Of a stretch of 64,000 nt of DNA, positions 40,776 to 52,023 are shown in pieces. Position numbers and translations under genes: made by a program. Under the pieces are notes generated by a model. The model worked only from the letters and a program-made list of their open reading frames with translations, searched no databases and was not told the origin of the DNA. Location of the stretch: IMG/VR virus record IMGVR_UViG_3300028829_003504, positions 124,001 to 188,000 of that record. One strand, written 5' to 3'. Position 1 is the stretch's first letter; every line of letters starts with the position of its first letter.

Positions 40776-42296
40776 TTAATCTTCTTCGTCCGCAACTAGG
40801 TCACCTTTACCTGCACAGATAAGAGCGAAATTCTTGAGAGCTTTACCATTCGCCAATTGCTTCTTACACCAGAAGCGTATATCAACAGGCTTAACACCAA
40901 GTAAGTCGCAAGTTTCTTTTACCTGTCGCTTGTTACCTAACACCAGTGCTTTGAATGATAACCAAGAACACTTCTTAGCTCCGTGTAAGGGACAATCTTC
41001 GTGGAATTTCATATTACCACGAGTACCGCCTACTACGCCTAACATCTTCAAGAAGTTCCAAGTATCAAACACTGGATCTAGGCCTCTAGCCACACCATCA
41101 GCATCACGAATCCAGATACGTGCAAATGTATCTTGATACTGTAGCCCGCCAAGTTTGTTCTTGATAACTTTCAAGTTGATGAAACGATATTCGTCGTTTC
41201 CTTCGTGCTCAACAGACTTCTCATCCATAGTAGGACCTTTACCCCAACCTGAAGGTAGAGCACGGCTGGTAGATTTTATTCTACAGTCAGAGAAGAATTT
41301 CAACGCTTCACCTCCCGGCTCATACTCAGGATTACCAAACATAGTCGCAGGCTTCTGTCGTAATTGATTAACCCCAAATACTGTCATGCGTTTCTTCTTC
41401 ATAGAACCTTTAATGCGTTTAAGTTCTTTGGAGAACATCCGCGCTTGCAGGGCCATTGCATTGCTACCTTCGTCCGTATCTTCTTGCCTAGGTAACATAG
41501 CAGGATAGGAATCTAGTAGCGCGATTGCTTGCATCATACCATCTGCGGCAGGCACTTTAATTTTGTTATGCTTAGATAAGTACTTAGGGTCATATACAGA
41601 TTTGAATCGCTTGAGTAATTTCTTATCATGAGGGAACAAATAGTAATACTCTTTGCCTAATTTAACTTTATCAGGTAGTATTCTTTTTAGTCGATTATAG
41701 AATTCGAAAAATTCCTCGCCTCCATCAGTGGAGATATAATCAACGATCGGAGGTGTAATTTCCTCACCTGTATCGGGGTCTCTCTCTCCGAAGATTTGGC
41801 TCAACGTTTGCTTAACGCCTTGTGATTTTAGAATACTCTCAATGTAGTCAGGGCTACCTGAACCTTCGTAATCCCAGTAGCTGGCTTTACCCTCAAAGCC
41901 TTGTTTAATTATAGCTGACATTATTGTCATAGCTATTGTTGTCTTAGCGGATTGTTCACCACCAAAGATAGTGTACCAGCCACCTGATACGATACCACCG
42001 CCTATTAATAGATCAAGTGATACTAAACCTGTATGTAAACGAGGTTCGTCTGGGTCAAAAGCTGTACCTGCAAGACCCATCTTCTTCTTAACGTCTGTAA
42101 TGGATTCATCTAACATGTTTTCCAATAGAGATTTCGTTAAGGCGACTGCCTCTGAATGAGCGTTATCTGCAACTAAGGTAGCTTTATCGGAATTCTTGGC
42201 TTTCTTAGTTTTAGGAACATCAGCAACCTCAAGAGCCTTTTTGGCTCCTTTAGTTACTTTGGCTGATTTAGATCTAGTCGCTGTTTTAGTTGCCAT
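40776..42296 (-). CDS. recA: RecA/UvsX-like recombinase
   Basis: TGLVSLDLLIGGGI, Walker A GGEQSAKTT, DYE, LLDSY, ALQARMFS, VNQLR, MFGNPEYEPGGEALKFFSD, KNKLG. Confidence 0.93.
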   Translation of the reverse strand: MATKTATRSKSAKVTKGAKKALEVADVPKTKKAKNSDKATLVADNAHSEAVALTKSLLENMLDESITDVKKKMGLAGTAFDPDEPRLHTGLVSLDLLIGGGIVSGGWYTIFGGEQSAKTTIAMTIMSAIIKQGFEGKASYWDYEGSGSPDYIESILKSQGVKQTLSQIFGERDPDTGEEITPPIVDYISTDGGEEFFEFYNRLKRILPDKVKLGKEYYYLFPHDKKLLKRFKSVYDPKYLSKHNKIKVPAADGMMQAIALLDSYPAMLPRQEDTDEGSNAMALQARMFSKELKRIKGSMKKKRMTVFGVNQLRQKPATMFGNPEYEPGGEALKFFSDCRIKSTSRALPSGWGKGPTMDEKSVEHEGNDEYRFINLKVIKNKLGGLQYQDTFARIWIRDADGVARGLDPVFDTWNFLKMLGVVGGTRGNMKFHEDCPLHGAKKCSWLSFKALVLGNKRQVKETCDLLGVKPVDIRFWCKKQLANGKALKNFALICAGKGDLVADEED

Positions 42297-42300
42297 CTAA

Positions 42301-43449
<1,149 letters not shown>

Positions 43450-43491
43450 TTAGATTTTCTCCTGTTTATAATTCGAAAAATACATTTACAG

Positions 43492-44541
43492 TTATGTATT
43501 TTGTAGACCTTGTTCGCGCATAGATACGCGCATCTTCTCTTTTTCAGATTTAGAAAACACCTCACCTATATCAAGGGTTAGTCTAGCACAACCATTAATG
43601 TCGGCGTGTTTTGCCAAGTACATAATATTATTAGACTCTCTCATGTTAGCAACCTCACTACTTAAGTCATAGTCGTTTGTAACTTTGTTATGTAGACCTT
43701 CCGCTGAATCCCCATCATCGTCTTCAACTATTTGGTCTAAGCTTGTGCTGAAATTAATCATAGTATTGGCCGAGCCTGACATAGCTAATTTTTTCTTCTG
43801 ACCTTGAGGCACAGTAAAGGCTATGCCGTACTCATGCTCAGAACTACTACAGGTCTGAGCATTAAACATCCACCACTTTATGTAGGAAGTTAAGGCACCT
43901 TTGTTTGCATCGTACTTGTTTAGAGCAATTATAACATTCTGTAGGAGACCTTGCCTTACGTCTAGGAAGTCGTATTGGTTATGAGGATTGGCCATAACGT
44001 GCTGCTTAGCCTGTGTGCTGCAAAGCCTTACGTATTCTTTCGCTACGTCTTGTTGATAGGCGTAAAACATCTTTAGGTAGTCAGTACTTTGATTGAAGCA
44101 TAAATATAAGTCGGACCGCTTTGTTGCGCCTAGGTCACGTTGGATTAGATCCAAATGCCTTGACCAACGGGCCCTGCGATTATCGAAGTTTGTAAGAAAT
44201 TTATCGTACAAACAATTAAACTCATCCTTATACCTATCCAACAAACGTTTAATGAAACAGTGGATAAAACTCCTCTCTATTCCAATCTTACGTATTAAGT
44301 TAAACTTCTTCTGCCTGTCAGACTCAAGATGTATCTGGCATAATATGTTAATGGCGTCTTCCCGTTCAAGAGCAACGAGTTTACGCTTTTTGTTTCTCGT
44401 TATCACCGATAGTATGTGAACCATTTGGGTATCAAATATATCAGTATGCAGGACAACGGGCTCAAGTGCATTATAGAGTAAGGTATCCATAATCTCACTT
44501 ATCTGGTCGCCCGTTAAGTTCTTGGTTTGGTCATCGGACAT
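43492..44541 (-). CDS. Sigma70-family sigma factor
   Basis: FLDVRQGLLQNVIIALNKYDANKGALTSYIKWWM matches region 2 (DLIQEG...AVDKFD..RG.KFSTYATWWI); TSLDQ matches region 3. Confidence 0.8.
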   Translation of the reverse strand: MSDDQTKNLTGDQISEIMDTLLYNALEPVVLHTDIFDTQMVHILSVITRNKKRKLVALEREDAINILCQIHLESDRQKKFNLIRKIGIERSFIHCFIKRLLDRYKDEFNCLYDKFLTNFDNRRARWSRHLDLIQRDLGATKRSDLYLCFNQSTDYLKMFYAYQQDVAKEYVRLCSTQAKQHVMANPHNQYDFLDVRQGLLQNVIIALNKYDANKGALTSYIKWWMFNAQTCSSSEHEYGIAFTVPQGQKKKLAMSGSANTMINFSTSLDQIVEDDDGDSAEGLHNKVTNDYDLSSEVANMRESNNIMYLAKHADINGCARLTLDIGEVFSKSEKEKMRVSMREQGLQNT

Positions 44542-45454: not shown

Positions 45455-46132
45455 TTAGGCTCCTTTACTTATAACAGCGTCAGCAGTGGCGATAAGATGT
45501 TTACAAAGACCAGGCGTCTCACCTGGGTTAGTAAAGTTAGGCTTATCACCGTTGCCATATATAATACGCGCCGCGCCGTACTTGGCGTTTGCATATTCCC
45601 ACATGTATGTATTATTCTCACAGTCACATGATACTAGGACTTTCTGATTCCTATCTGAAATCTTCAAGTCGTGAAGTCTACCTATGATAGTAACTTTATG
45701 ATCTCGCGGCGTAGCGTCAGGTCGCCATGTATCAAAATGCCTACATGTGGCTGTAACCGCAGGTAACCCTGACGCCGTCTTAGTACGCTTGAACTTTCTA
45801 ACTGTAGTCTCAGAGCCATTCTCCTTCATCAATCTAGGAGTATTACGGTACAGTTGCTTCAAAGTCAAACCTTTCTTAGAAAGAGATGTCTCGGGAAGCT
45901 GCTGCACCAGGTTCTGACCTTGCAAAGGCATTATACGAACCTGTCTTACTTTTTGCGCCCTAGTAGTTCTAGTGGCTGCTTTCTTCGGCTTTGCTTTTGC
46001 TGCCGTAGACTCAAGACCTTTATACTTAGTTTTACGTGTCGAGGTACGGGCTTTACTGGCGCGTTCAGCGTTACGCTTAGCTGGAGACTTGGTTTTCTTA
46101 ACAGAGGATTTAATTCCAGTGTATTTGGGCAT
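45455..46132 (-). CDS. SWIM-like Zn-finger protein with basic N-terminus
   Basis: VSCDCE...NP...GLCKHLIA. Confidence 0.7.
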   Translation of the reverse strand: MPKYTGIKSSVKKTKSPAKRNAERASKARTSTRKTKYKGLESTAAKAKPKKAATRTTRAQKVRQVRIMPLQGQNLVQQLPETSLSKKGLTLKQLYRNTPRLMKENGSETTVRKFKRTKTASGLPAVTATCRHFDTWRPDATPRDHKVTIIGRLHDLKISDRNQKVLVSCDCENNTYMWEYANAKYGAARIIYGNGDKPNFTNPGETPGLCKHLIATADAVISKGA

Positions 46133-46167: not shown

Positions 46168-46608
46168 TTACTTATCGTGAGTCATCCATTTCAACCCTTC
46201 TAGAGTATCGTGCAATTTAAACAATCGAGTCTTAGTGCCTTCTTTTGTTTCACCTACGATATAAAGATTAGCGCTGTAATTACTAGGTACCTTATCTTTA
46301 ATCTGTTTAAGGGAGGCATAAGATTTCTTACCTTTCTTCTTACCCTTATACAATGAGTAGGAAGAATACTTTTCGCCCAACCAGCTCTTAACAATCTCAA
46401 GCATTTCATCAGGATATTTGTACTGCATCTCCTCGTCATTCAAACGATAGAACATCGTGTTTGCACCGCCCTTACCGACTAGGTAAGTAACGCCAGCAAC
46501 AGTTGCTAAGAACTGCCACTGGAAAATCTTTCTTTCTTCGGGAGTCAATGAAGCTTCTTTAAGTAAAGCTCCTTTCACTTGGTCATGTAGTACTTTAAAT
46601 GGATTCAC
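46168..46608 (-). CDS. Hypothetical protein at the end of the modification operon
   Basis: 146 aa, GTG start. Confidence 0.65.
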   Translation of the reverse strand: MNPFKVLHDQVKGALLKEASLTPEERKIFQWQFLATVAGVTYLVGKGGANTMFYRLNDEEMQYKYPDEMLEIVKSWLGEKYSSYSLYKGKKKGKKSYASLKQIKDKVPSNYSANLYIVGETKEGTKTRLFKLHDTLEGLKWMTHDK

Positions 46609-46622
46609 GTTACCGCCTGTAG

Positions 46623-47510
46623 TTACAATAGTTCTTTTGGTATTTTACCTAACCGAACATCGTTATATATCGCAACTACTGATTTAGAGTTTCGTATATT
46701 CCAGTCAGAGCTAAGTAGTTTATCGCTAAAGTTGTCTGCGATGTTAGTATCACCTAATTGAAAGTTCTGGTGAGGCTTAACTATACATTTTTTCAAGTCA
46801 TCGGCAAAGGCTTCACGTAACTGGCGTTTCTGAGGCTTGTGCATCTCCTCGTAAGTCCCGACCGATAACATTTCTGCCCACACACGGCAAGTAGTGAAAG
46901 GTATGTGGAAGATTTTATCTTTCTTGTAAGCCAAGTTCTGGAAGAAAGTATTTTGAATCTTTACGTCACCGCGAAAGTTAGATTGCCAGTACTTCTTAAC
47001 AATATCTTTGGCGTGCATACTAGGTTTCTTAGCAGTGGCGAAGTAGATATCTGAATCAAAGCCAACTACAATATGCTTTGCTGGGCAGTTACGTACTGCT
47101 TGCATCATAGGCCAGATACATTCAATTGAACTTTTCTTAATAAGACCTAACTTACCGACAGCATGTTTAACCCAACTCTTTAGGTGTTTCTCGGAAGAGT
47201 TTAAAATAACTGGATTAAACTCCAAGCCGTAAACTTCTGAGGCATGTTTAGCTGCTTTGAAGTCGGTACTTTCATGTGTGTCTAAAGTAAACGAAGTGAT
47301 TAATGGGCGGTGTCCTAGAGCTAGCATGGCCCATAGTACCGCGTGGCTATCCATACCGCTAGACATAAATACGGAAGTACTTTGTGTAGTAGGTATAGGC
47401 CGCAGGGCACTCATTAATGCCATCTTCATGTCAGCAGGGCGAGAGCAGTTGTCCTCAAGCTCTTGTCTAAACTTCTCTCGCATCTTTTTTGTGCTTTCTG
47501 ATATAGCCAC
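46623..47510 (-). CDS. Asparagine-synthetase-like ATP-dependent amide ligase (synthetase domain only)
   Basis: PP-loop VFMSSGMDS, STDFKAA, VGFDSDIYF (cf. GEGADELF), IPF, K..LREAF, FQLG; no Ntn glutaminase domain. Confidence 0.8.
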   Translation of the reverse strand: MAISESTKKMREKFRQELEDNCSRPADMKMALMSALRPIPTTQSTSVFMSSGMDSHAVLWAMLALGHRPLITSFTLDTHESTDFKAAKHASEVYGLEFNPVILNSSEKHLKSWVKHAVGKLGLIKKSSIECIWPMMQAVRNCPAKHIVVGFDSDIYFATAKKPSMHAKDIVKKYWQSNFRGDVKIQNTFFQNLAYKKDKIFHIPFTTCRVWAEMLSVGTYEEMHKPQKRQLREAFADDLKKCIVKPHQNFQLGDTNIADNFSDKLLSSDWNIRNSKSVVAIYNDVRLGKIPKELL

Positions 47511-47520
47511 GCACAGTCTC

Positions 47521-48534
47521 CTATTTTACGTTAAAGAACTCGTCTGCTTTGACAAACGCCGTAAGCAACTCAGGTTCGCGTGTAGGATCGAATACAGGTA
47601 CGCTGTATTGCGCTTTCAGCTTATCACGTAAGGCAGCGTATACTTCGAAGCTTACTTCACGGCTAAATAAAGAGATTGCACCTAGACGTACATTAGGATT
47701 AGAAAAACGAGCAACCTGTAAGTTGAATCGAATTGTCTCATCTAAATCAATAGGCGTAGTAGTATCATTAATAATAGTACGGCTAGGATCGTGGCAGGCG
47801 ATCATCATATCAGGCTGTGAGCCTTGAATGATCGCATAAGTAGAACCGCCGAAACTAGGATGCAATATAGAGCCTTGACCTTCAACAACGTCAATGTGAT
47901 TATGGGGTGCAGAAGGTGTCTCTTGCTCAAGTGCCCCTACAATGAAATCAGCAGGTATCGTGTCGTTGGTAATGCCTGCACCGCTGATCAAGTAGCCTGT
48001 CTGGCCAGTTGCAACGAAACGACTGGAGTAACTTTGATTTAGCAATTCTTTCCATACTGATAAGGCTGTGAACTTCTTGCCTGATGCACAATCTGTACCG
48101 AAGGTAAGAATACGATAACCTGAACGTTCCTCGCCCGTACCTTTAATCCAATCGATAGGTTTATGTCGGAAATCGTATACTTCTATTCCGTTTAAGTCAC
48201 CAAACTCAGCAAGCAACACAGGCTCAAGTTTAGCATGAGAGCCTGATGCTATATTTAAGCCCAGGTCAATTGCTTCTTTACATACGCTAAGTACTCTAGA
48301 ATTGAAGTTACTTACTTCTCGAGGACTGAATCCGAGTAATAATGTTTTAGCGCCTGCTTCTTTAGCTTGCGCTAAACTCATATCAGGAAGACCTAGGTCG
48401 TAGGCTTCTTCGCTATCACGGTGTTGAGCCAGACATCGCTCAGGGGCCCAATCGACAATACCACATGCTGTCTTTACTTTACGGAATATAGTTTCGGAGC
48501 CTACATATATAATAAATGGATGTTGAATATTCAT
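47521..48534 (-). CDS. DUF1611 / DgcN-like P-loop protein (N-acetyltransferase family)
   Basis: Start MNIQHPF; KTACGIVDW.PE, DLGLPDMS, GAKTLLLG, GTDCASGKKFTAL, FVATGQTG, DFIVGA, VVEGQGSILHPSF, GSQPD...CH. Confidence 0.88.
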   Translation of the reverse strand: MNIQHPFIIYVGSETIFRKVKTACGIVDWAPERCLAQHRDSEEAYDLGLPDMSLAQAKEAGAKTLLLGFSPREVSNFNSRVLSVCKEAIDLGLNIASGSHAKLEPVLLAEFGDLNGIEVYDFRHKPIDWIKGTGEERSGYRILTFGTDCASGKKFTALSVWKELLNQSYSSRFVATGQTGYLISGAGITNDTIPADFIVGALEQETPSAPHNHIDVVEGQGSILHPSFGGSTYAIIQGSQPDMMIACHDPSRTIINDTTTPIDLDETIRFNLQVARFSNPNVRLGAISLFSREVSFEVYAALRDKLKAQYSVPVFDPTREPELLTAFVKADEFFNVK

Positions 48535-48548
48535 TTGTTTACCTTGTG

Positions 48549-49325
48549 TTATTTGATGCAGACCCAGCCTGCGAAGTTTAAATGACGATAGAAGCAATCG
48601 ATGTTCTTAAAGCCCGCAAGCGTTAACATTTCCTCATTGGCTCTAGCGGTTTGCGGAACAAGAACGCCTTCGAGTGAGGCTTTCTTGCGATCAATATCTT
48701 CGTAAGAATAACCATTACTGTGTTTCATTTTATGATACTCACCGACAAATAATTTGTTCAATCTACTACCACTACCTAGAATCTTCTCCACAAAGATAAA
48801 GGCTCCGCCGACAGGTAAGGCATCATAGATATTCTGAATGATTTCAAGTCGGTACTCTATAGGAGTAAACTGGATAGTTAGTATAGAAAGAATCAAACCA
48901 TGCTTCTCAGGCCAACCTATAGTTTGAGGACACTGAAAAATATGAGGCTGCCTCAAATCATCTCGATACACTTCAACGTTTCGGTTCTCAATGAAACGAT
49001 CGTCAAGCTCGGTCAGCATAGGCTCAGATATCTCAATAGCATAGCAGCCTATAGTAGGGTCTTTAGTGAACGGGGCGAGTGCTTCACCTCGACTAGCTCC
49101 TAGATCAAGGACAGTACGTAGACCGAAGTTTGAGCGGTTTTGCTCTGCTCTAGGTAAAGCATTCAATACGTCCATACCTAACTGGTAAGTCAGACTACGC
49201 ATCATGTCGTAGCTAGGTATACTACGTGATAGCATGTTATCAAAAGATTGTGCAACATCCTGGTTAAACTCCCACTTGTCGCCTGGGACGTGCGTATCTT
49301 CTCGGACTTTGGGTTCGTCTTTCAC
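48549..49325 (-). CDS. cmoA: CmoA-like carboxy-S-adenosylmethionine synthase
   Basis: WEFNQDVAQSFDNMLSRSIPSY (cf. FPDMIQRSVPGY), DLGASRG, TIQF, FVEK, K.SNGYS..DI.RKK.SLEGV, LNFAG. Confidence 0.88.
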   Translation of the reverse strand: MKDEPKVREDTHVPGDKWEFNQDVAQSFDNMLSRSIPSYDMMRSLTYQLGMDVLNALPRAEQNRSNFGLRTVLDLGASRGEALAPFTKDPTIGCYAIEISEPMLTELDDRFIENRNVEVYRDDLRQPHIFQCPQTIGWPEKHGLILSILTIQFTPIEYRLEIIQNIYDALPVGGAFIFVEKILGSGSRLNKLFVGEYHKMKHSNGYSYEDIDRKKASLEGVLVPQTARANEEMLTLAGFKNIDCFYRHLNFAGWVCIK

Positions 49326-49438: not shown

Positions 49439-49804
49439 TTACCAGCTATCTTTATAGGGGTTTTCCGTTTCAGTCAGGTCATACTTAGATAGAGGGACTT
49501 CATCGGATAGGTAGGTAATAGGGTCTCTTAAAATACATAATACACTTCGAGTAACGTAATCTGACACAGGTGTGGCTGCTTGAAGTATGTACCCTCCTGA
49601 GTCAATCTGTGCGCCTGTATAGGTCGAGTAGTTAATACTGTTTTTAAGTCGCTCAACATCTAGTGCGAACTCAGGATCAGTAACGGTATCCCGTTTGTGG
49701 TCAAAAGCCATGTGCGTACCAAGCTCAATCAAACGTAAACCTAATATCTTAGATCGCTCTCTGCTATAGAAAGGTAGAATTAGATTCTTGAATAGTTTAA
49801 GCAA
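49439..49804 (-). CDS. Hypothetical protein
   Basis: 121 aa, TTG start uncertain. Confidence 0.55.
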   Translation of the reverse strand: MLKLFKNLILPFYSRERSKILGLRLIELGTHMAFDHKRDTVTDPEFALDVERLKNSINYSTYTGAQIDSGGYILQAATPVSDYVTRSVLCILRDPITYLSDEVPLSKYDLTETENPYKDSW

Positions 49805-49937: not shown

Positions 49938-51002
49938 CTATATACCCTTACCGCTTACGGGGCCTTTAGTATAGTCTAAACCACAGCCATCGGCAATAAC
50001 CTTAAGCAGATTGTTGACAATCTCTTTAGTTATACAGTACATCATTTGCGGAGGTACGGAACGACCAAGACGCTCCCATTGCTGCTCATACGTACCTATT
50101 AACTTGAAGTCTTCCGGGAAACCGCACACTACCTTCAATTCTTCGATCGTGTACTTACGCTGTACGCCCTCAAACGTCTCGATAAACCCACCAGAACTAA
50201 ACTGAGCCGTAGGTGAAGTAGCACCGTCACTAGCCGTAATGGTAGGATGAGGAACTTGCGCAGTAGCCCAGTTAAGGGTTCCTCCGGCTTCTTTAGATCT
50301 AAGCATAGCGATGTGCGGCAGTTTCTCCTGCACAGTAACCTGTCTGTGTGCAGGTTTAGGGAACACAGGCTTCAAGTCGTACTTCTTAGCAAGGTCTTTT
50401 CTGATGCCGACGTAGATTATACGTTCACGCCCTTGAGGAACACCTAACCAAGAACCGTTTATCTTTGCAGCACGTACAACGTAACCGCATTCAGCAAGCT
50501 TACCAGTTATTTCTTTGAAGTAACCTTTAGCATCACCTTTAATAAGGCCAGTAACGTTTTCTGCTACGAACACCCAAGGCTTTAAACCTTTTAACTCACG
50601 GCAGAATTCAAAGAACAAATCGTCTACACGTTGCTTAACGCCTTCTGAGTAATCCTTTGCTTCGCCCCATCCATCTTCACGAGTACCTGCTGTAGAGAAC
50701 GCACTGCATGGTGGGCTTCCGTCAAGAAAAGGTAAGTGTCCTTTCTTTATTCCTAAAAGCTTCAATACGTCGGAAGGTTTAACCTTTCGGATGTCTGAAC
50801 CATCGCAGAAGCTTTTAACGTGGTTGGCTTCATACGTTTCACGCGCAACGGGAATAAATTCGTTAGCGTATTTTATATCAATACCCGCCATTTTGTGCCC
50901 TGTACAAGAACCACCACAACCTGAGAAGAAACTTGCTCCTAAGAACAATTTCTTCTTCTTGTTTATCTGCTTCATTGTAGGAATCGTAGGAGGAAGTTTC
51001 AT
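49938..51002 (-). CDS. DNA cytosine-C5 transferase, predicted carboxymethyltransferase
   Basis: Motif I FFSGCGG, IV GSPPCSAFS, VI AENV, VIII VPQGRERI, X QQWERLGRSVPP (Asn replaced by Arg). Start placed at MKLPP. Confidence 0.9.
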   Translation of the reverse strand: MKLPPTIPTMKQINKKKKLFLGASFFSGCGGSCTGHKMAGIDIKYANEFIPVARETYEANHVKSFCDGSDIRKVKPSDVLKLLGIKKGHLPFLDGSPPCSAFSTAGTREDGWGEAKDYSEGVKQRVDDLFFEFCRELKGLKPWVFVAENVTGLIKGDAKGYFKEITGKLAECGYVVRAAKINGSWLGVPQGRERIIYVGIRKDLAKKYDLKPVFPKPAHRQVTVQEKLPHIAMLRSKEAGGTLNWATAQVPHPTITASDGATSPTAQFSSGGFIETFEGVQRKYTIEELKVVCGFPEDFKLIGTYEQQWERLGRSVPPQMMYCITKEIVNNLLKVIADGCGLDYTKGPVSGKGI

Positions 51003-51115
51003 ATAACCCAACCTAGTTTCGTTTGAATTTGAATAAGAGTATAGTTAAATATAATAGATGCCTGTTCCATAAGAGTAAGCATCAATATAATCTCTTGTAT
51101 ACATATATGCGGCAT
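50999..51115 (-). CDS. 38-aa peptide coupled to the transferase start
   Basis: AGGA RBS; TGA overlaps the next ATG (ATGA). Confidence 0.35.
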   Translation of the reverse strand: MPHICIQEIILMLTLMEQASIIFNYTLIQIQTKLGWVI

Positions 51116-51132
51116 AATATGTCCTATTAGAA

Positions 51133-52023
51133 TTATTTACCTGCGAAGCGGTACTTACATCGAGGACAACACTGATCAAGTTCATCATCAAATGTATCCT
51201 CACCGTATTCCTCAAATGAGGCAGGACCTTTACCTTTTGACTTAGAATCAGTAGACTCGTCACTGGAACCTAGTGAAGGTAACTCGGGAAGTGTTTTAAT
51301 TTTAAGGGCGTCAAGCCCCATAGTATCGATATCAAACCCTCCGTCGCGTATTTCAAGTTCTTCCACCATGAAAGCAAGTTTACTATTGTCGAACTCACCA
51401 CCATGTGCGTTAGCTGCAATGTTTGCGGCGAATTCTACTTTCTTATCGGACCAGTCTACTACGCGGAATGGAATACGGTAGTTTCGATTATCTCCTAGAA
51501 TAACAGTCATGAATCCTTCTTCGATAGTACCGTGCTGGCAATCTTTAATAGGATTAGTTATGATTTTAGTCTCATAACCTTTCTTCCTGATACTAGAAGT
51601 ACGTTGATGTCCAGATACTAAGTGGCCTGAACGTCGGTTAAAAACGATACCTGACAGGTCACCGAATTCTTCGTATGACTTACCTAAGTTATCTAATCTA
51701 CGTGCAGTAATGAAACGTGGGTTATAGCTCGCACCTCTTAAGTCAGTTAGGCCCCAATCTCCTTTACGTTTAGAAGTCTTCTTATTCTCCCGAACCTTCT
51801 TAACTTTAAATTTCTTTGTGGCTACTTTTGATATACCTGATATCTCAAGTGAACCAGAAGCAGAAGTGGACCCAGACTTAGGTTTAACTATTTTATCCAG
51901 TTTCCCTGATTTCTTGGCCTTTTTAGTCTTTTTAGCTACTTTAGACTCAGAGGTAGCCTTAGATTTCTTTGTTAATTTCGCAGCTTTCCCTCTAACAGCT
52001 ACTTTCGTTTCTTTCTTTGCCAT
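51133..52023 (-). CDS. ParB/Srx N-terminal-domain protein with Lys-rich N-terminus and C-terminal Zn ribbon
   Basis: YNPRFI...LGKS.EEFG...IVFN....LVSGHQR...NIAAN..GGEFD; CPRCKYRF. Confidence 0.85.
   Translation of the reverse strand: MAKKETKVAVRGKAAKLTKKSKATSESKVAKKTKKAKKSGKLDKIVKPKSGSTSASGSLEISGISKVATKKFKVKKVRENKKTSKRKGDWGLTDLRGASYNPRFITARRLDNLGKSYEEFGDLSGIVFNRRSGHLVSGHQRTSSIRKKGYETKIITNPIKDCQHGTIEEGFMTVILGDNRNYRIPFRVVDWSDKKVEFAANIAANAHGGEFDNSKLAFMVEELEIRDGGFDIDTMGLDALKIKTLPELPSLGSSDESTDSKSKGKGPASFEEYGEDTFDDELDQCCPRCKYRFAGK

What the first reader, a model, noticed from the sequence alone, without database searches (positions are those of the whole stretch)
46623..47510. Glutaminase-less asparagine-synthetase homolog with altered PP-loop
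Seen: only the synthetase domain (295 aa), SSGMDS instead of SGGLDS and GFDSD instead of GEGAD. Inference: without a glutaminase domain the nucleophile is free ammonia or an organic amine, and the basic composition fits a DNA substrate rather than aspartate.
Basis: partly seen in the sequence, partly recalled or inferred. Interest (0 to 1): 0.6.

Follow-up and report, generated by a model that had tools for sequence, protein, structure and literature searches.

The report
Phage DNA carboxymethyl-cytosine amide ligase (CmoY-like)
This gene of a marine jumbo phage is a stripped-down asparagine-synthetase relative that most likely uses ATP to attach an amine to carboxymethylated cytosines in the phage's own DNA; this kind of enzyme was first described in 2025, but here it is a divergent branch with an extra, unexplained partner enzyme.

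Summary
The ORF is real, but it lies on the minus strand (46623-47510, 295 aa, GTG start with an AGGAG ribosome-binding site). It carries SSGMDS (res. 50-55) and GFDSD (res. 150-154). It has only the AsnB-type synthetase (PP-loop) domain, and the complete 261.8-kb phage genome encodes no glutaminase.

It is a full-length homolog of SpCmoY, the ATP-dependent 5-carboxymethylcytosine:glycine ligase of Synechococcus phage S-B43 (PMC12783734): 25% identity, hhalign probability 99.3%.

It sits in a one-strand run of genes: ParB-like, CmoX, a 121-aa ORF, CmoA, DUF1611, this ligase. The CmoX candidate is a C5-methyltransferase homolog with the SPPC motif and the Cx-SAM arginine.

- The "altered" PP-loop is ordinary variation. 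The family consensus is SGGIDS, and S, G, D, S are invariant.
- Basic charge is not diagnostic, because the proven SpCmoY is acidic.

Still open:
- the amine. The ligase belongs to a separate, uncharacterised clade;
- the DgcN-like DUF1611 enzyme between CmoA and the ligase. The same arrangement recurs in 34 Erwinia/Dickeya jumbo-phage records and is not mentioned in the 2025 paper.

The parts
46623..47510 (-). CmoY-like AMP-forming amide ligase (P0001, 295 aa). AsnB-type synthetase/PP-loop domain only. PP-loop SSGMDS at 47346-47363 and GFDSD at 47049-47063.
47521..48597 (-). DUF1611 / DgcN-like P-loop protein (N and C domains; conserved GTDCxSGKKFT). The longest ORF starts at TTG 48597 and overlaps cmoA. 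The likely true start is ATG 48534 (M22), just after the cmoA stop.
   Evidence: Pfam PF07755 E 7e-49 plus PF17396. NF041892 DgcN at 295.7 bits, below the 480 cut-off. PDB 7xrj E 1e-54. Alignment A3. Start analysis. Recurs beside CmoA and a ligase in 34 phage records.
48549..49325 (-). CmoA homolog (carboxy-SAM synthase), 258 aa.
   Evidence: TIGR00740 E 5e-29, below cut-off. 26% identity and E 4e-22 to the assayed SpCmoA. 44% identity to PaBG gp178.
49439..49804 (-). 121-aa ORF of unknown function. It occupies the slot where relatives L006 and L009 carry a chorismate mutase (CM_2).
   Evidence: No family hit. Relatives' layout. No CM_2 anywhere in G000.
49938..51011 (-). CmoX candidate: C5-cytosine methyltransferase homolog with SPPC (Cys102) and Arg317 in GRSVPP. 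Arg317 aligns with SpCmoX Arg350, which binds the Cx-SAM carboxylate. It is the only PF00145 gene in the phage.
   Evidence: Published marks from PMC12783734.
51133..52023 (-). ParB-like domain protein next to CmoX. The 2025 paper noted ParBc proteins near CmoX.
   Evidence: PHROG 620 E 6e-25. 48% identity to the PaBG ParB-like gp176. Paper text.
46168..46608 (-). 146-aa basic protein (P0018, PHROG 23597) of unknown function. It is a conserved neighbour of the cluster in PaBG, Y3, L006 and probably L011. It may be only a syntenic backbone gene.

Best explanation
P0001 is a CmoY-type, ATP-dependent (AMP-forming) amide ligase that works on the phage's own DNA.

Proposed pathway:
1. The phage CmoA converts SAM and prephenate to carboxy-SAM.
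2. The CmoX-type C5-methyltransferase homolog transfers the carboxymethyl group to cytosine C5 in DNA, giving 5cxmC.
3. P0001 binds ATP through its PP-loop (S50-x-G52-x-D54-S55; Mg2+ through D154).
4. P0001 adenylates the 5cxmC carboxylate, releasing PPi.
5. An amine then attacks the acyl-adenylate, giving a 5cxmC amide and AMP.

Because neither the protein nor the phage has a glutaminase, the nucleophile is most likely a small organic amine or amino acid from the host pool, not glutamine-derived ammonia.

The DgcN-like DUF1611 protein encoded between cmoA and this gene probably tailors the product or supplies the amine, for example by acyl-CoA-dependent N-acylation. The likely benefit is protection of phage DNA from host nucleases.

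Shown here: homology, fold, motif conservation and gene context. Shown by others for the homolog: the chemistry. Inferred: the activity of this protein, its amine and the role of DUF1611.
For: Homology to the assayed enzyme: BLASTP to SpCmoY gives 25% identity over 252 aa, E 4e-17. hhalign of the family profile against SpCmoY gives probability 99.3%, E 4e-20, covering 250 of its 271 residues.

Shared signature across all ligase clades, including SpCmoY: S50, G52, D54, K126, E130, C131, P134, G150, D154, P226-Q227-K228, H247, Q251, N271, K276.

Fold: the model (pLDDT 86) is closest to the synthetase domains of beta-lactam synthetase, AsnB, ASNS and carbapenam synthetase, with TM 0.60-0.66 normalised to the query. 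The profile hits AsnB 1ct9 and beta-lactam synthetase 1jgt.

Context in the window: the CmoX candidate has SPPC plus the Arg that aligns with SpCmoX R350. A CmoA homolog is present. All genes are on one strand, the ligase start is coupled to the DUF1611 stop, and a ParB-like gene lies beside CmoX as in the paper.

Context of homologs: every examined homolog of P0001 sits beside CmoA and/or CmoX: L006, L009, L010, L011, Y3 and PaBG.

No glutaminase in the genome.

The chemistry of CmoA, CmoX and CmoY was established in PMC12783734.
Against: - No assay exists for this protein or for any member of its clade.
- Identity to SpCmoY is only 25%, and P0001 lies in a different, well-supported clade (100/99) with a long terminal branch.
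- Its Pfam Asn_synthase score is below the gathering cut-off.
- AsnB's catalytic Glu348 is replaced by Phe151. However, SpCmoY has Ile there and beta-lactam synthetase has Tyr (established knowledge).
- The role proposed for DUF1611 rests only on adjacency and on the annotation of a bacterial relative.
Confidence: 0.8

Rival explanations
1. Same enzyme class and DNA substrate, but the nucleophile is free ammonia, so the product is 5-carbamoylmethylcytosine (a primary amide).
For: There is no glutaminase domain and no amine-making enzyme that can be recognised with confidence. NH3-dependent PP-loop amidotransferases exist (established knowledge).
Against: The 2025 survey found a large separate ligase cluster that keeps the glutaminase domain and is predicted to make the primary amide. 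The glutaminase-less SpCmoY uses glycine. This argues that glutaminase-less forms use organic amines. Nothing tested here discriminates between the two.
Confidence: 0.15
2. It is a genuine metabolic asparagine synthetase (an auxiliary metabolic gene) that makes Asn from Asp and ammonia.
For: Database annotations of homologs read 'asparagine synthase'. There is a weak AsnB family hit.
Against: It scores far below the AsnB cut-offs: 21.3 against 267.1 bits for TIGR01536 and 18.8 against 21 bits for PF00733. It lacks the glutaminase domain. AsnB Glu348 is replaced by Phe. It is always linked to CmoA and CmoX. Its nearest characterised relative acts on DNA.
Confidence: 0.02
3. It activates a carboxylate that is not in DNA, for example the cmo5U-type carboxyl of tRNA, carboxy-SAM itself or a small metabolite. 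Alternatively it performs an intramolecular cyclisation like beta-lactam or carbapenam synthetase.
For: The best structural matches include beta-lactam and carbapenam synthetases. CmoA's ancestral role is in tRNA modification.
Against: The phage pairs CmoA with a DNA C5-methyltransferase homolog that carries the Cx-SAM arginine. SpCmoY was shown to act on dsDNA.
Confidence: 0.04
4. It is a decaying or inactive copy, because the PP-loop and the second glycine-rich motif are altered and the branch is long.
For: SSG replaces SGG and GFDSD replaces GLGGD. Terminal branch 0.64 against a median of 0.12. The Pfam score is below cut-off.
Against: The frame is intact with a good RBS. All residues that are invariant across clades are kept. 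The same SSG variant occurs in PaBG and AD1-type ligases, and G[FL][DE]SD occurs in P0002 and P0013. The model is confident.
Confidence: 0.04

Closest known systems
SpCmoY of Synechococcus phage S-B43 (A0A514ABJ0; PMC12783734)
   Same: Glutaminase-less AsnB-type synthetase domain of about 270-295 aa. Alignable over the full length (99.3% hhalign probability). Shares the PP-loop, GxxxD, K..EC..P, PQK and H..Q motifs. Encoded beside CmoA and CmoX.
   Different: Only 25% identity, and a different clade in the tree. pI 9.4 against 5.8. SSG instead of SGG. The operon has an extra DUF1611 gene and a different gene order. The amine is unknown, whereas SpCmoY uses glycine.
Glutaminase-containing ligase cluster of the same paper (A0A7T0Q3R0)
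   Same: AsnB-related ligases linked to CmoX and CmoA in phages.
   Different: Those keep the glutamine-hydrolysing domain and are predicted to make the primary amide. P0001 has no such domain, and the phage has no glutaminase.
E. coli asparagine synthetase B (1ct9) and human ASNS
   Same: Synthetase-domain fold. PP-loop ATP pyrophosphatase chemistry through an acyl-adenylate. G347 and D351 equivalents are kept (G150, D154).
   Different: No N-terminal glutaminase domain. Glu348 is replaced by Phe151. Scores lie far below the family cut-offs. The predicted substrate is a DNA base rather than aspartate.
Beta-lactam synthetase / carbapenam synthetase (1mc1, 1q15)
   Same: Best structural matches. 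These are AsnB-derived enzymes that adenylate a carboxylate and no longer use glutamine.
   Different: Those keep a vestigial N-terminal domain and cyclise a small molecule. Nothing in the context here suggests beta-lactam chemistry.
DgcN (D-glutamate N-acetyltransferase; NF041892; PDB 7xrj), as relative of the neighbouring DUF1611 gene
   Same: Same two-domain DUF1611 architecture with a conserved P-loop.
   Different: Scores 295.7 against a 480-bit equivalog cut-off. It is encoded in a phage DNA-modification operon and not beside a dgcA racemase gene.

Membership tests
CmoY (phage 5cxmC-DNA:amine AMP-forming ligase, PMC12783734) | Full-length sequence homology to the assayed SpCmoY | tested here: met
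   BLASTP E 4e-17, 25% identity over 252 aa. hhalign probability 99.3%, E 4e-20, 250 columns.
CmoY (phage 5cxmC-DNA:amine AMP-forming ligase, PMC12783734) | AsnB-type synthetase (PP-loop) fold without a glutaminase domain | tested here: met
   Foldseek top hits are beta-lactam synthetase, AsnB and ASNS. The profile hits 1ct9 and 1jgt. The family models align only to the synthetase half.
CmoY (phage 5cxmC-DNA:amine AMP-forming ligase, PMC12783734) | ATP-binding PP-loop and Mg-binding Asp retained | tested here: met
   S50, G52, D54, G150 and D154 are invariant across all clades including SpCmoY; S55 is invariant only within the P0001 family (AD1-type ligases have Gly there). Only the first Gly of SGG is Ser, as in PaBG and AD1.
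CmoY (phage 5cxmC-DNA:amine AMP-forming ligase, PMC12783734) | Encoded with CmoA and with a CmoX carrying SPPC and the Cx-SAM arginine | tested here: met
   The window's CmoX has Cys102 in SPPC, and Arg317 aligns with SpCmoX Arg350. CmoA homolog present.
CmoY (phage 5cxmC-DNA:amine AMP-forming ligase, PMC12783734) | ATP- and amine-dependent amidation of 5cxmC in DNA | not testable with these tools
   Needs LC-MS of nucleosides or an enzyme assay.
CmoY (phage 5cxmC-DNA:amine AMP-forming ligase, PMC12783734) | Glycine as the amine (glycine-carboxylate-binding pocket residues) | tested here: inconclusive
   The pocket residues are given only in a figure (Suppl. Fig. 8) and not in the text held. 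P0001 lies in a different clade from SpCmoY.
Asparagine synthetase B, glutamine-hydrolysing (TIGR01536 / PF00733) | N-terminal Ntn glutaminase domain | tested here: not met
   Only 39 residues precede the synthetase domain. There is no GATase_7 or GATase hit in the whole phage genome.
Asparagine synthetase B, glutamine-hydrolysing (TIGR01536 / PF00733) | Score above the curated family cut-offs | tested here: not met
   21.3 against 267.1 bits and 18.8 against 21 bits.
Asparagine synthetase B, glutamine-hydrolysing (TIGR01536 / PF00733) | Catalytic Glu348 in GEGSD | tested here: not met
   The profile alignment to 1ct9 puts Phe151 opposite Glu348.
CmoX (DNA cytosine C5-carboxymethyltransferase), neighbour gene 49938-51011 | C5-MTase fold with the SPPC motif and the Arg equivalent to SpCmoX R350 | tested here: met
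   PF00145 E 7e-45. 36% identity to SpCmoX. C102 and R317.
CmoA (carboxy-SAM synthase), neighbour gene 48549-49325 | Equivalog-level match to CmoA | tested here: inconclusive
   TIGR00740 E 5e-29, but 101.7 bits is below the 193.3 cut-off. 26% identity and E 4e-22 to the assayed phage SpCmoA.
DgcN (D-glutamate N-acetyltransferase), neighbour gene 47521-48597 | Equivalog-level match to NF041892 | tested here: not met
   295.7 bits against a 480 cut-off. It is a DUF1611-family member, not a DgcN ortholog.

The most novel reading that the evidence does not exclude
The operon CmoX - CmoA - DUF1611 - CmoY-like makes a 5cxmC-derived hypermodified base that differs from the published 5-glycyl-carboxymethylcytosine. 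In this reading the divergent ligase attaches a non-glycine amine, for example a D-amino acid or an amino acid or diamine that leaves a free amino group. The DgcN-like DUF1611 enzyme then performs a further step not seen before in DNA modification, such as acyl-CoA-dependent N-acylation or supply of the amine.

Support: the same CmoA - DUF1611 - ligase order recurs in Dickeya and Erwinia jumbo phages, with an alanine-racemase-like gene added in some. DUF1611 is joined to two distant ligase clades. Closely related phages swap accessory enzymes at this locus (2OG-Fe(II) oxygenase, DUF1611, racemase, or none), as expected for an arms-race hot spot.
Probability: 0.35. Interest if true: 0.7.

Novelty: new variant of a known kind. 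Interest (0 to 1): 0.45.

Why it matters
Carboxymethylcytosine as a 'handle' for DNA hypermodification was reported only in late 2025, with one ligase (glycine) characterised. That paper states that other ligase clusters with unknown amines remain to be identified.

This window offers a compact, complete and apparently co-transcribed example from an uncharacterised ligase clade. It also has an additional DUF1611/DgcN-like enzyme that the paper does not mention.

Working out its product would widen the known chemistry of phage DNA: which amides, and whether they are tailored further. It could give DUF1611 proteins a second biochemical context. It could also supply new enzymes for site-directed DNA functionalisation.

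Tried and rejected
- Megablast of 6 kb around the gene against the phage collection gave no match. The phage has no close sequenced relative there, so only protein-level searches worked.
- The search for related loci with the single DUF1611 protein found nothing. With a three-sequence alignment it returned only IMG/VR copies of the Alexandravirus-type isolates already seen.
- I looked for the glycine-pocket residues of SpCmoY in the paper's supplement. Only the figure legend is held, with no residue numbers, so no pocket comparison could be made.
- The 146-aa neighbour P0018 gave no Pfam or NCBIfam hit and no usable ESM Atlas hit. I considered it as a possible fourth pathway component. I rate it as probably a syntenic backbone gene, because it travels with a 206/87/151-aa trio in Erwinia jumbo phages whatever the ligase type.
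- The 225-aa ORF 45455-46132 is not the '2OG oxygenase' of relatives. It matches a different Sen-NF protein. G000 has no PF13640, PF01168 or PF01817 gene.
- A literature search for 'DgcN' by word start returned mostly unrelated hits. The original DgcN paper is not in the library. Its function is taken from the NCBIfam name and from PMC12363236.
- A second weak Asn_synthase hit lies outside the window (G000:C1:28954-29127, E 0.02). I treated it as noise.

Not run:
- The large representative-protein search, because the word search and family scans had already placed the protein.
- Read laying, because the only holders are two DNA runs of one marine-metagenome sample that may be the source of the contig, and there is no RNA run.
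- Complex prediction, because no binding claim is made.

Full report
**Observation**

The + strand of 46623-47510 is closed by many stops. The reverse strand is one open frame of 295 aa, P0001. Its GTG start at 47510 lies 7 nt after AGGAG, and the stop codon of the upstream gene overlaps that ribosome-binding site. Homologs start at the equivalent residue.

Only the synthetase half of an AsnB-type enzyme is there:
- Residues 40-149 align to positions 250-357 of the 517-position model TIGR01536.
- A profile of the family aligns to E. coli AsnB residues 200-414 and to beta-lactam synthetase.
- An AlphaFold2 model (mean pLDDT 86.3, pTM 0.85) has as best PDB matches beta-lactam synthetase, human ASNS, E. 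coli AsnB and carbapenam synthetase. TM is 0.57-0.66 normalised to the query and always falls on their C-terminal domains.

The direct Pfam match is weak (18.8 bits, cut-off 21). The phage family PHROG 26038 matches at E 5e-85.

**Where it lies**

The window is bases 124001-188000 of a complete 261,788-bp virus record with direct terminal repeats. The stretch is held by two DNA runs of one marine-metagenome sample.

All genes around the ORF are on the minus strand and tightly packed. In transcription order they are:
- a ParB-like protein, 51133-52023;
- a C5-cytosine methyltransferase homolog, 49938-51011 (PF00145 E 7e-45);
- a 121-aa ORF with no family;
- a CmoA homolog, 48549-49325 (TIGR00740 E 5e-29);
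- a DUF1611 protein, 47521-48597 (PF07755 E 7e-49);
- P0001;
- a 146-aa and a 225-aa protein of unknown function;
- then a sigma factor, an SSB and a UvsX-like recombinase.

**What is known**

Yang et al. (Nat Commun 2025, PMC12783734) showed the following in Synechococcus phage S-B43:
- CmoA makes carboxy-SAM.
- CmoX, a C5-methyltransferase homolog marked by an SPPC motif and by Arg350 contacting the cofactor's carboxylate, makes 5-carboxymethylcytosine in DNA.
- CmoY, a glutaminase-less asparagine-synthetase homolog, ligates glycine to that carboxyl with ATP, both in vivo and on dsDNA in vitro.

They also found 2,251 such ligases next to CmoX genes. One large cluster keeps a glutaminase domain. 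'Several other clusters' have different pocket residues and unknown amines.

**Comparison with that system**

I took the S-B43 genes from the phage collection.
- P0001 aligns with SpCmoY at 25% identity over 252 residues, E 4e-17.
- The profile of P0001's family aligns with SpCmoY over 250 of its 271 residues, with hhalign probability 99.3%.
- The window's methyltransferase homolog is 36% identical to SpCmoX. It has SPPC with Cys102, and Arg317 in GRSVPP sits exactly opposite SpCmoX Arg350. It is the only PF00145 gene of the phage.
- The CmoA homolog is 26% identical to the assayed SpCmoA, E 4e-22.

So all three published components are present, and the published sequence marks that could be tested are met.

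**The 'altered' motifs**

In an alignment of 17 family members the consensus PP-loop is the canonical SGGIDS, and S50, G52, D54 and S55 are invariant. P0001, P0013 and P0016 have SSG, and P0017 has SAG. PaBG (SSGVDS) and AD1-type ligases (SSGLDG) show the same variation.

The second motif has the consensus GLGGDS. P0001, P0002 and P0013 share G[FL][DE]SD. G150 and D154 are invariant and align with AsnB G347 and D351. Phe151 stands where AsnB has the catalytic Glu348, and SpCmoY has Ile there.

Across all clades, including SpCmoY, a further signature is invariant: K126, E130-C131, P134, P226-Q227-K228, H247, Q251, N271, K276.

The motifs therefore argue for an active enzyme of the CmoY type. 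They do not point to a special departure.

**Charge**

P0001 has pI 9.4, as do its jumbo-phage homologs (9.1-9.5). The proven DNA enzyme SpCmoY has pI 5.8.

**No glutaminase**

The phage genome gives no hit to GATase_7 or to class-I GATase. The controls rang in 14 of 14 genomes. The paper's primary-amide candidates keep their glutaminase. I therefore consider an organic amine more likely than ammonia. This is inference.

**Relatives and their neighbourhoods**

Protein-level searches find P0001-type ligases at 44-53% identity in metagenomic jumbo-phage contigs, Erwinia phages Y3 and Yoloswag, and Salmonella phage Sen-NF. More distant types occur in PaBG, other Erwinia jumbo phages, Yersinia phage fHe-Yen9-02 and a Staphylococcus phage. 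In the public records they are called 'asparagine synthase' or 'hypothetical'.

Every neighbourhood I read contains CmoA and/or a C5-methyltransferase. The accessory genes differ:
- A 2OG-Fe(II) oxygenase (PF13640) follows the P0001-type ligase in L006, L009, L010, Y3 and Sen-NF.
- A chorismate mutase lies between CmoX and CmoA in L006 and L009. It would supply prephenate, the co-substrate of CmoA.
- PaBG, L011, SNUABM_5 and SNUABM_35 have neither.
- The window's phage has no oxygenase, chorismate mutase or alanine racemase anywhere. It has DUF1611 instead.

**DUF1611**

The window protein matches the DgcN model (N-acetyltransferase DgcN) at 295.7 bits, below the 480-bit equivalog cut-off. [quoted passage not shown]

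Homologs at 33-39% identity occur in 34 phage records, all Erwinia or Dickeya jumbo phages. They sit in the same position:
- CmoA - DUF1611 - ligase in Dickeya phage AD1;
- CmoA - 420-aa unknown - DUF1611 - ligase in SNUABM_7;
- CmoA - 420-aa unknown - DUF1611 - alanine-racemase-like protein - ligase in SNUABM_32.

A P-loop motif GTDCxSGKKFT is conserved. The 2025 paper does not mention DUF1611, oxygenases or chorismate mutase. The only phage paper that names DUF1611 merely lists it as a gene unique to AD1.

In a maximum-likelihood tree of 26 ligases, P0001 is nested in the clade whose other members with known context mostly carry the oxygenase. That clade has 18 rows and support 100/99, and P0001 is sister to P0002 and P0013. 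The AD1-type, DUF1611-linked ligases group with SpCmoY (100/99). Branches are long and the root is arbitrary.

DUF1611 is thus combined with two distant ligase types. This argues that it is a portable module of this pathway and not a chance neighbour. What it does cannot be told from sequence. N-acylation of a tethered or free amine, or supply of the amine, is my best guess, and I mark it as speculation.

**Verdict**

The protein is best filed as a member of the CmoY ligase superfamily, in an uncharacterised clade. It is not an asparagine synthetase: three defining features of AsnB were tested and not met.

What is new is modest but real:
- a divergent ligase clade with an unknown amine;
- a recurrent DUF1611 partner not yet described;
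- a picture of this locus as a hot spot where related jumbo phages exchange tailoring enzymes.

Noticed in passing
window 47521-48597 (-): A DUF1611/DgcN-like P-loop protein lies between cmoA and the ligase. The same CmoA - DUF1611 - ligase order occurs in 34 Erwinia/Dickeya jumbo-phage records. The CmoX/CmoY paper does not mention it. The longest ORF overlaps cmoA by 49 nt, and the likely start is ATG 48534.
   Followed up: partly
L006:6718-7161 and L009:5949-6215 (relatives); window 49439-49804: Two related jumbo-phage contigs encode a chorismate mutase (CM_2) between CmoX and CmoA. This would feed prephenate to CmoA. The window has an unrelated 121-aa ORF in that slot and no CM_2 anywhere in the genome.
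   Followed up: partly
L006:9234-9863, L009:8135-8734, L010:8193-8846, L002:9152-9790, L001:10877-11524: A 2OG-Fe(II) oxygenase (PF13640) follows the P0001-type ligase in five relatives. This suggests a further oxidative tailoring step there. It is absent from the window's phage.
   Followed up: partly
L008:7020-7955 (Erwinia phage pEa_SNUABM_32): An alanine-racemase-like gene sits between DUF1611 and the ligase. Together with the DgcN kinship of DUF1611, this hints at D-amino-acid chemistry in that variant.
   Followed up: no
L009:3643-5940: The CmoX-type methyltransferase of this relative (765 aa) is interrupted by an intein (Hint_2 / Intein_splicing).
   Followed up: no
window 46168-46608 (-): A 146-aa basic protein (PHROG 23597) is conserved next to the cluster in PaBG (between CmoA and the ligase), Y3, L006 and probably L011. 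No fold or family lead was found.
   Followed up: partly
window 51133-52023 (-): A ParB-like domain protein lies beside the CmoX candidate, matching the ParBc association reported for CmoX contigs. Its role is unknown.
   Followed up: no
window 40776-44541 (-): Downstream of the modification genes lie a phage sigma factor (PHROG 17569), an SSB (PHROG 15004) and a UvsX-like recombinase. Salmonella phage Sen-NF also encodes these three (in a different order) next to its ligase.
   Followed up: no
G000:C1:28954-29127 (outside the window): A weak second match to Pfam Asn_synthase (E 0.02, model positions 280-331) lies inside a 556-aa open frame. It is probably noise.
   Followed up: no
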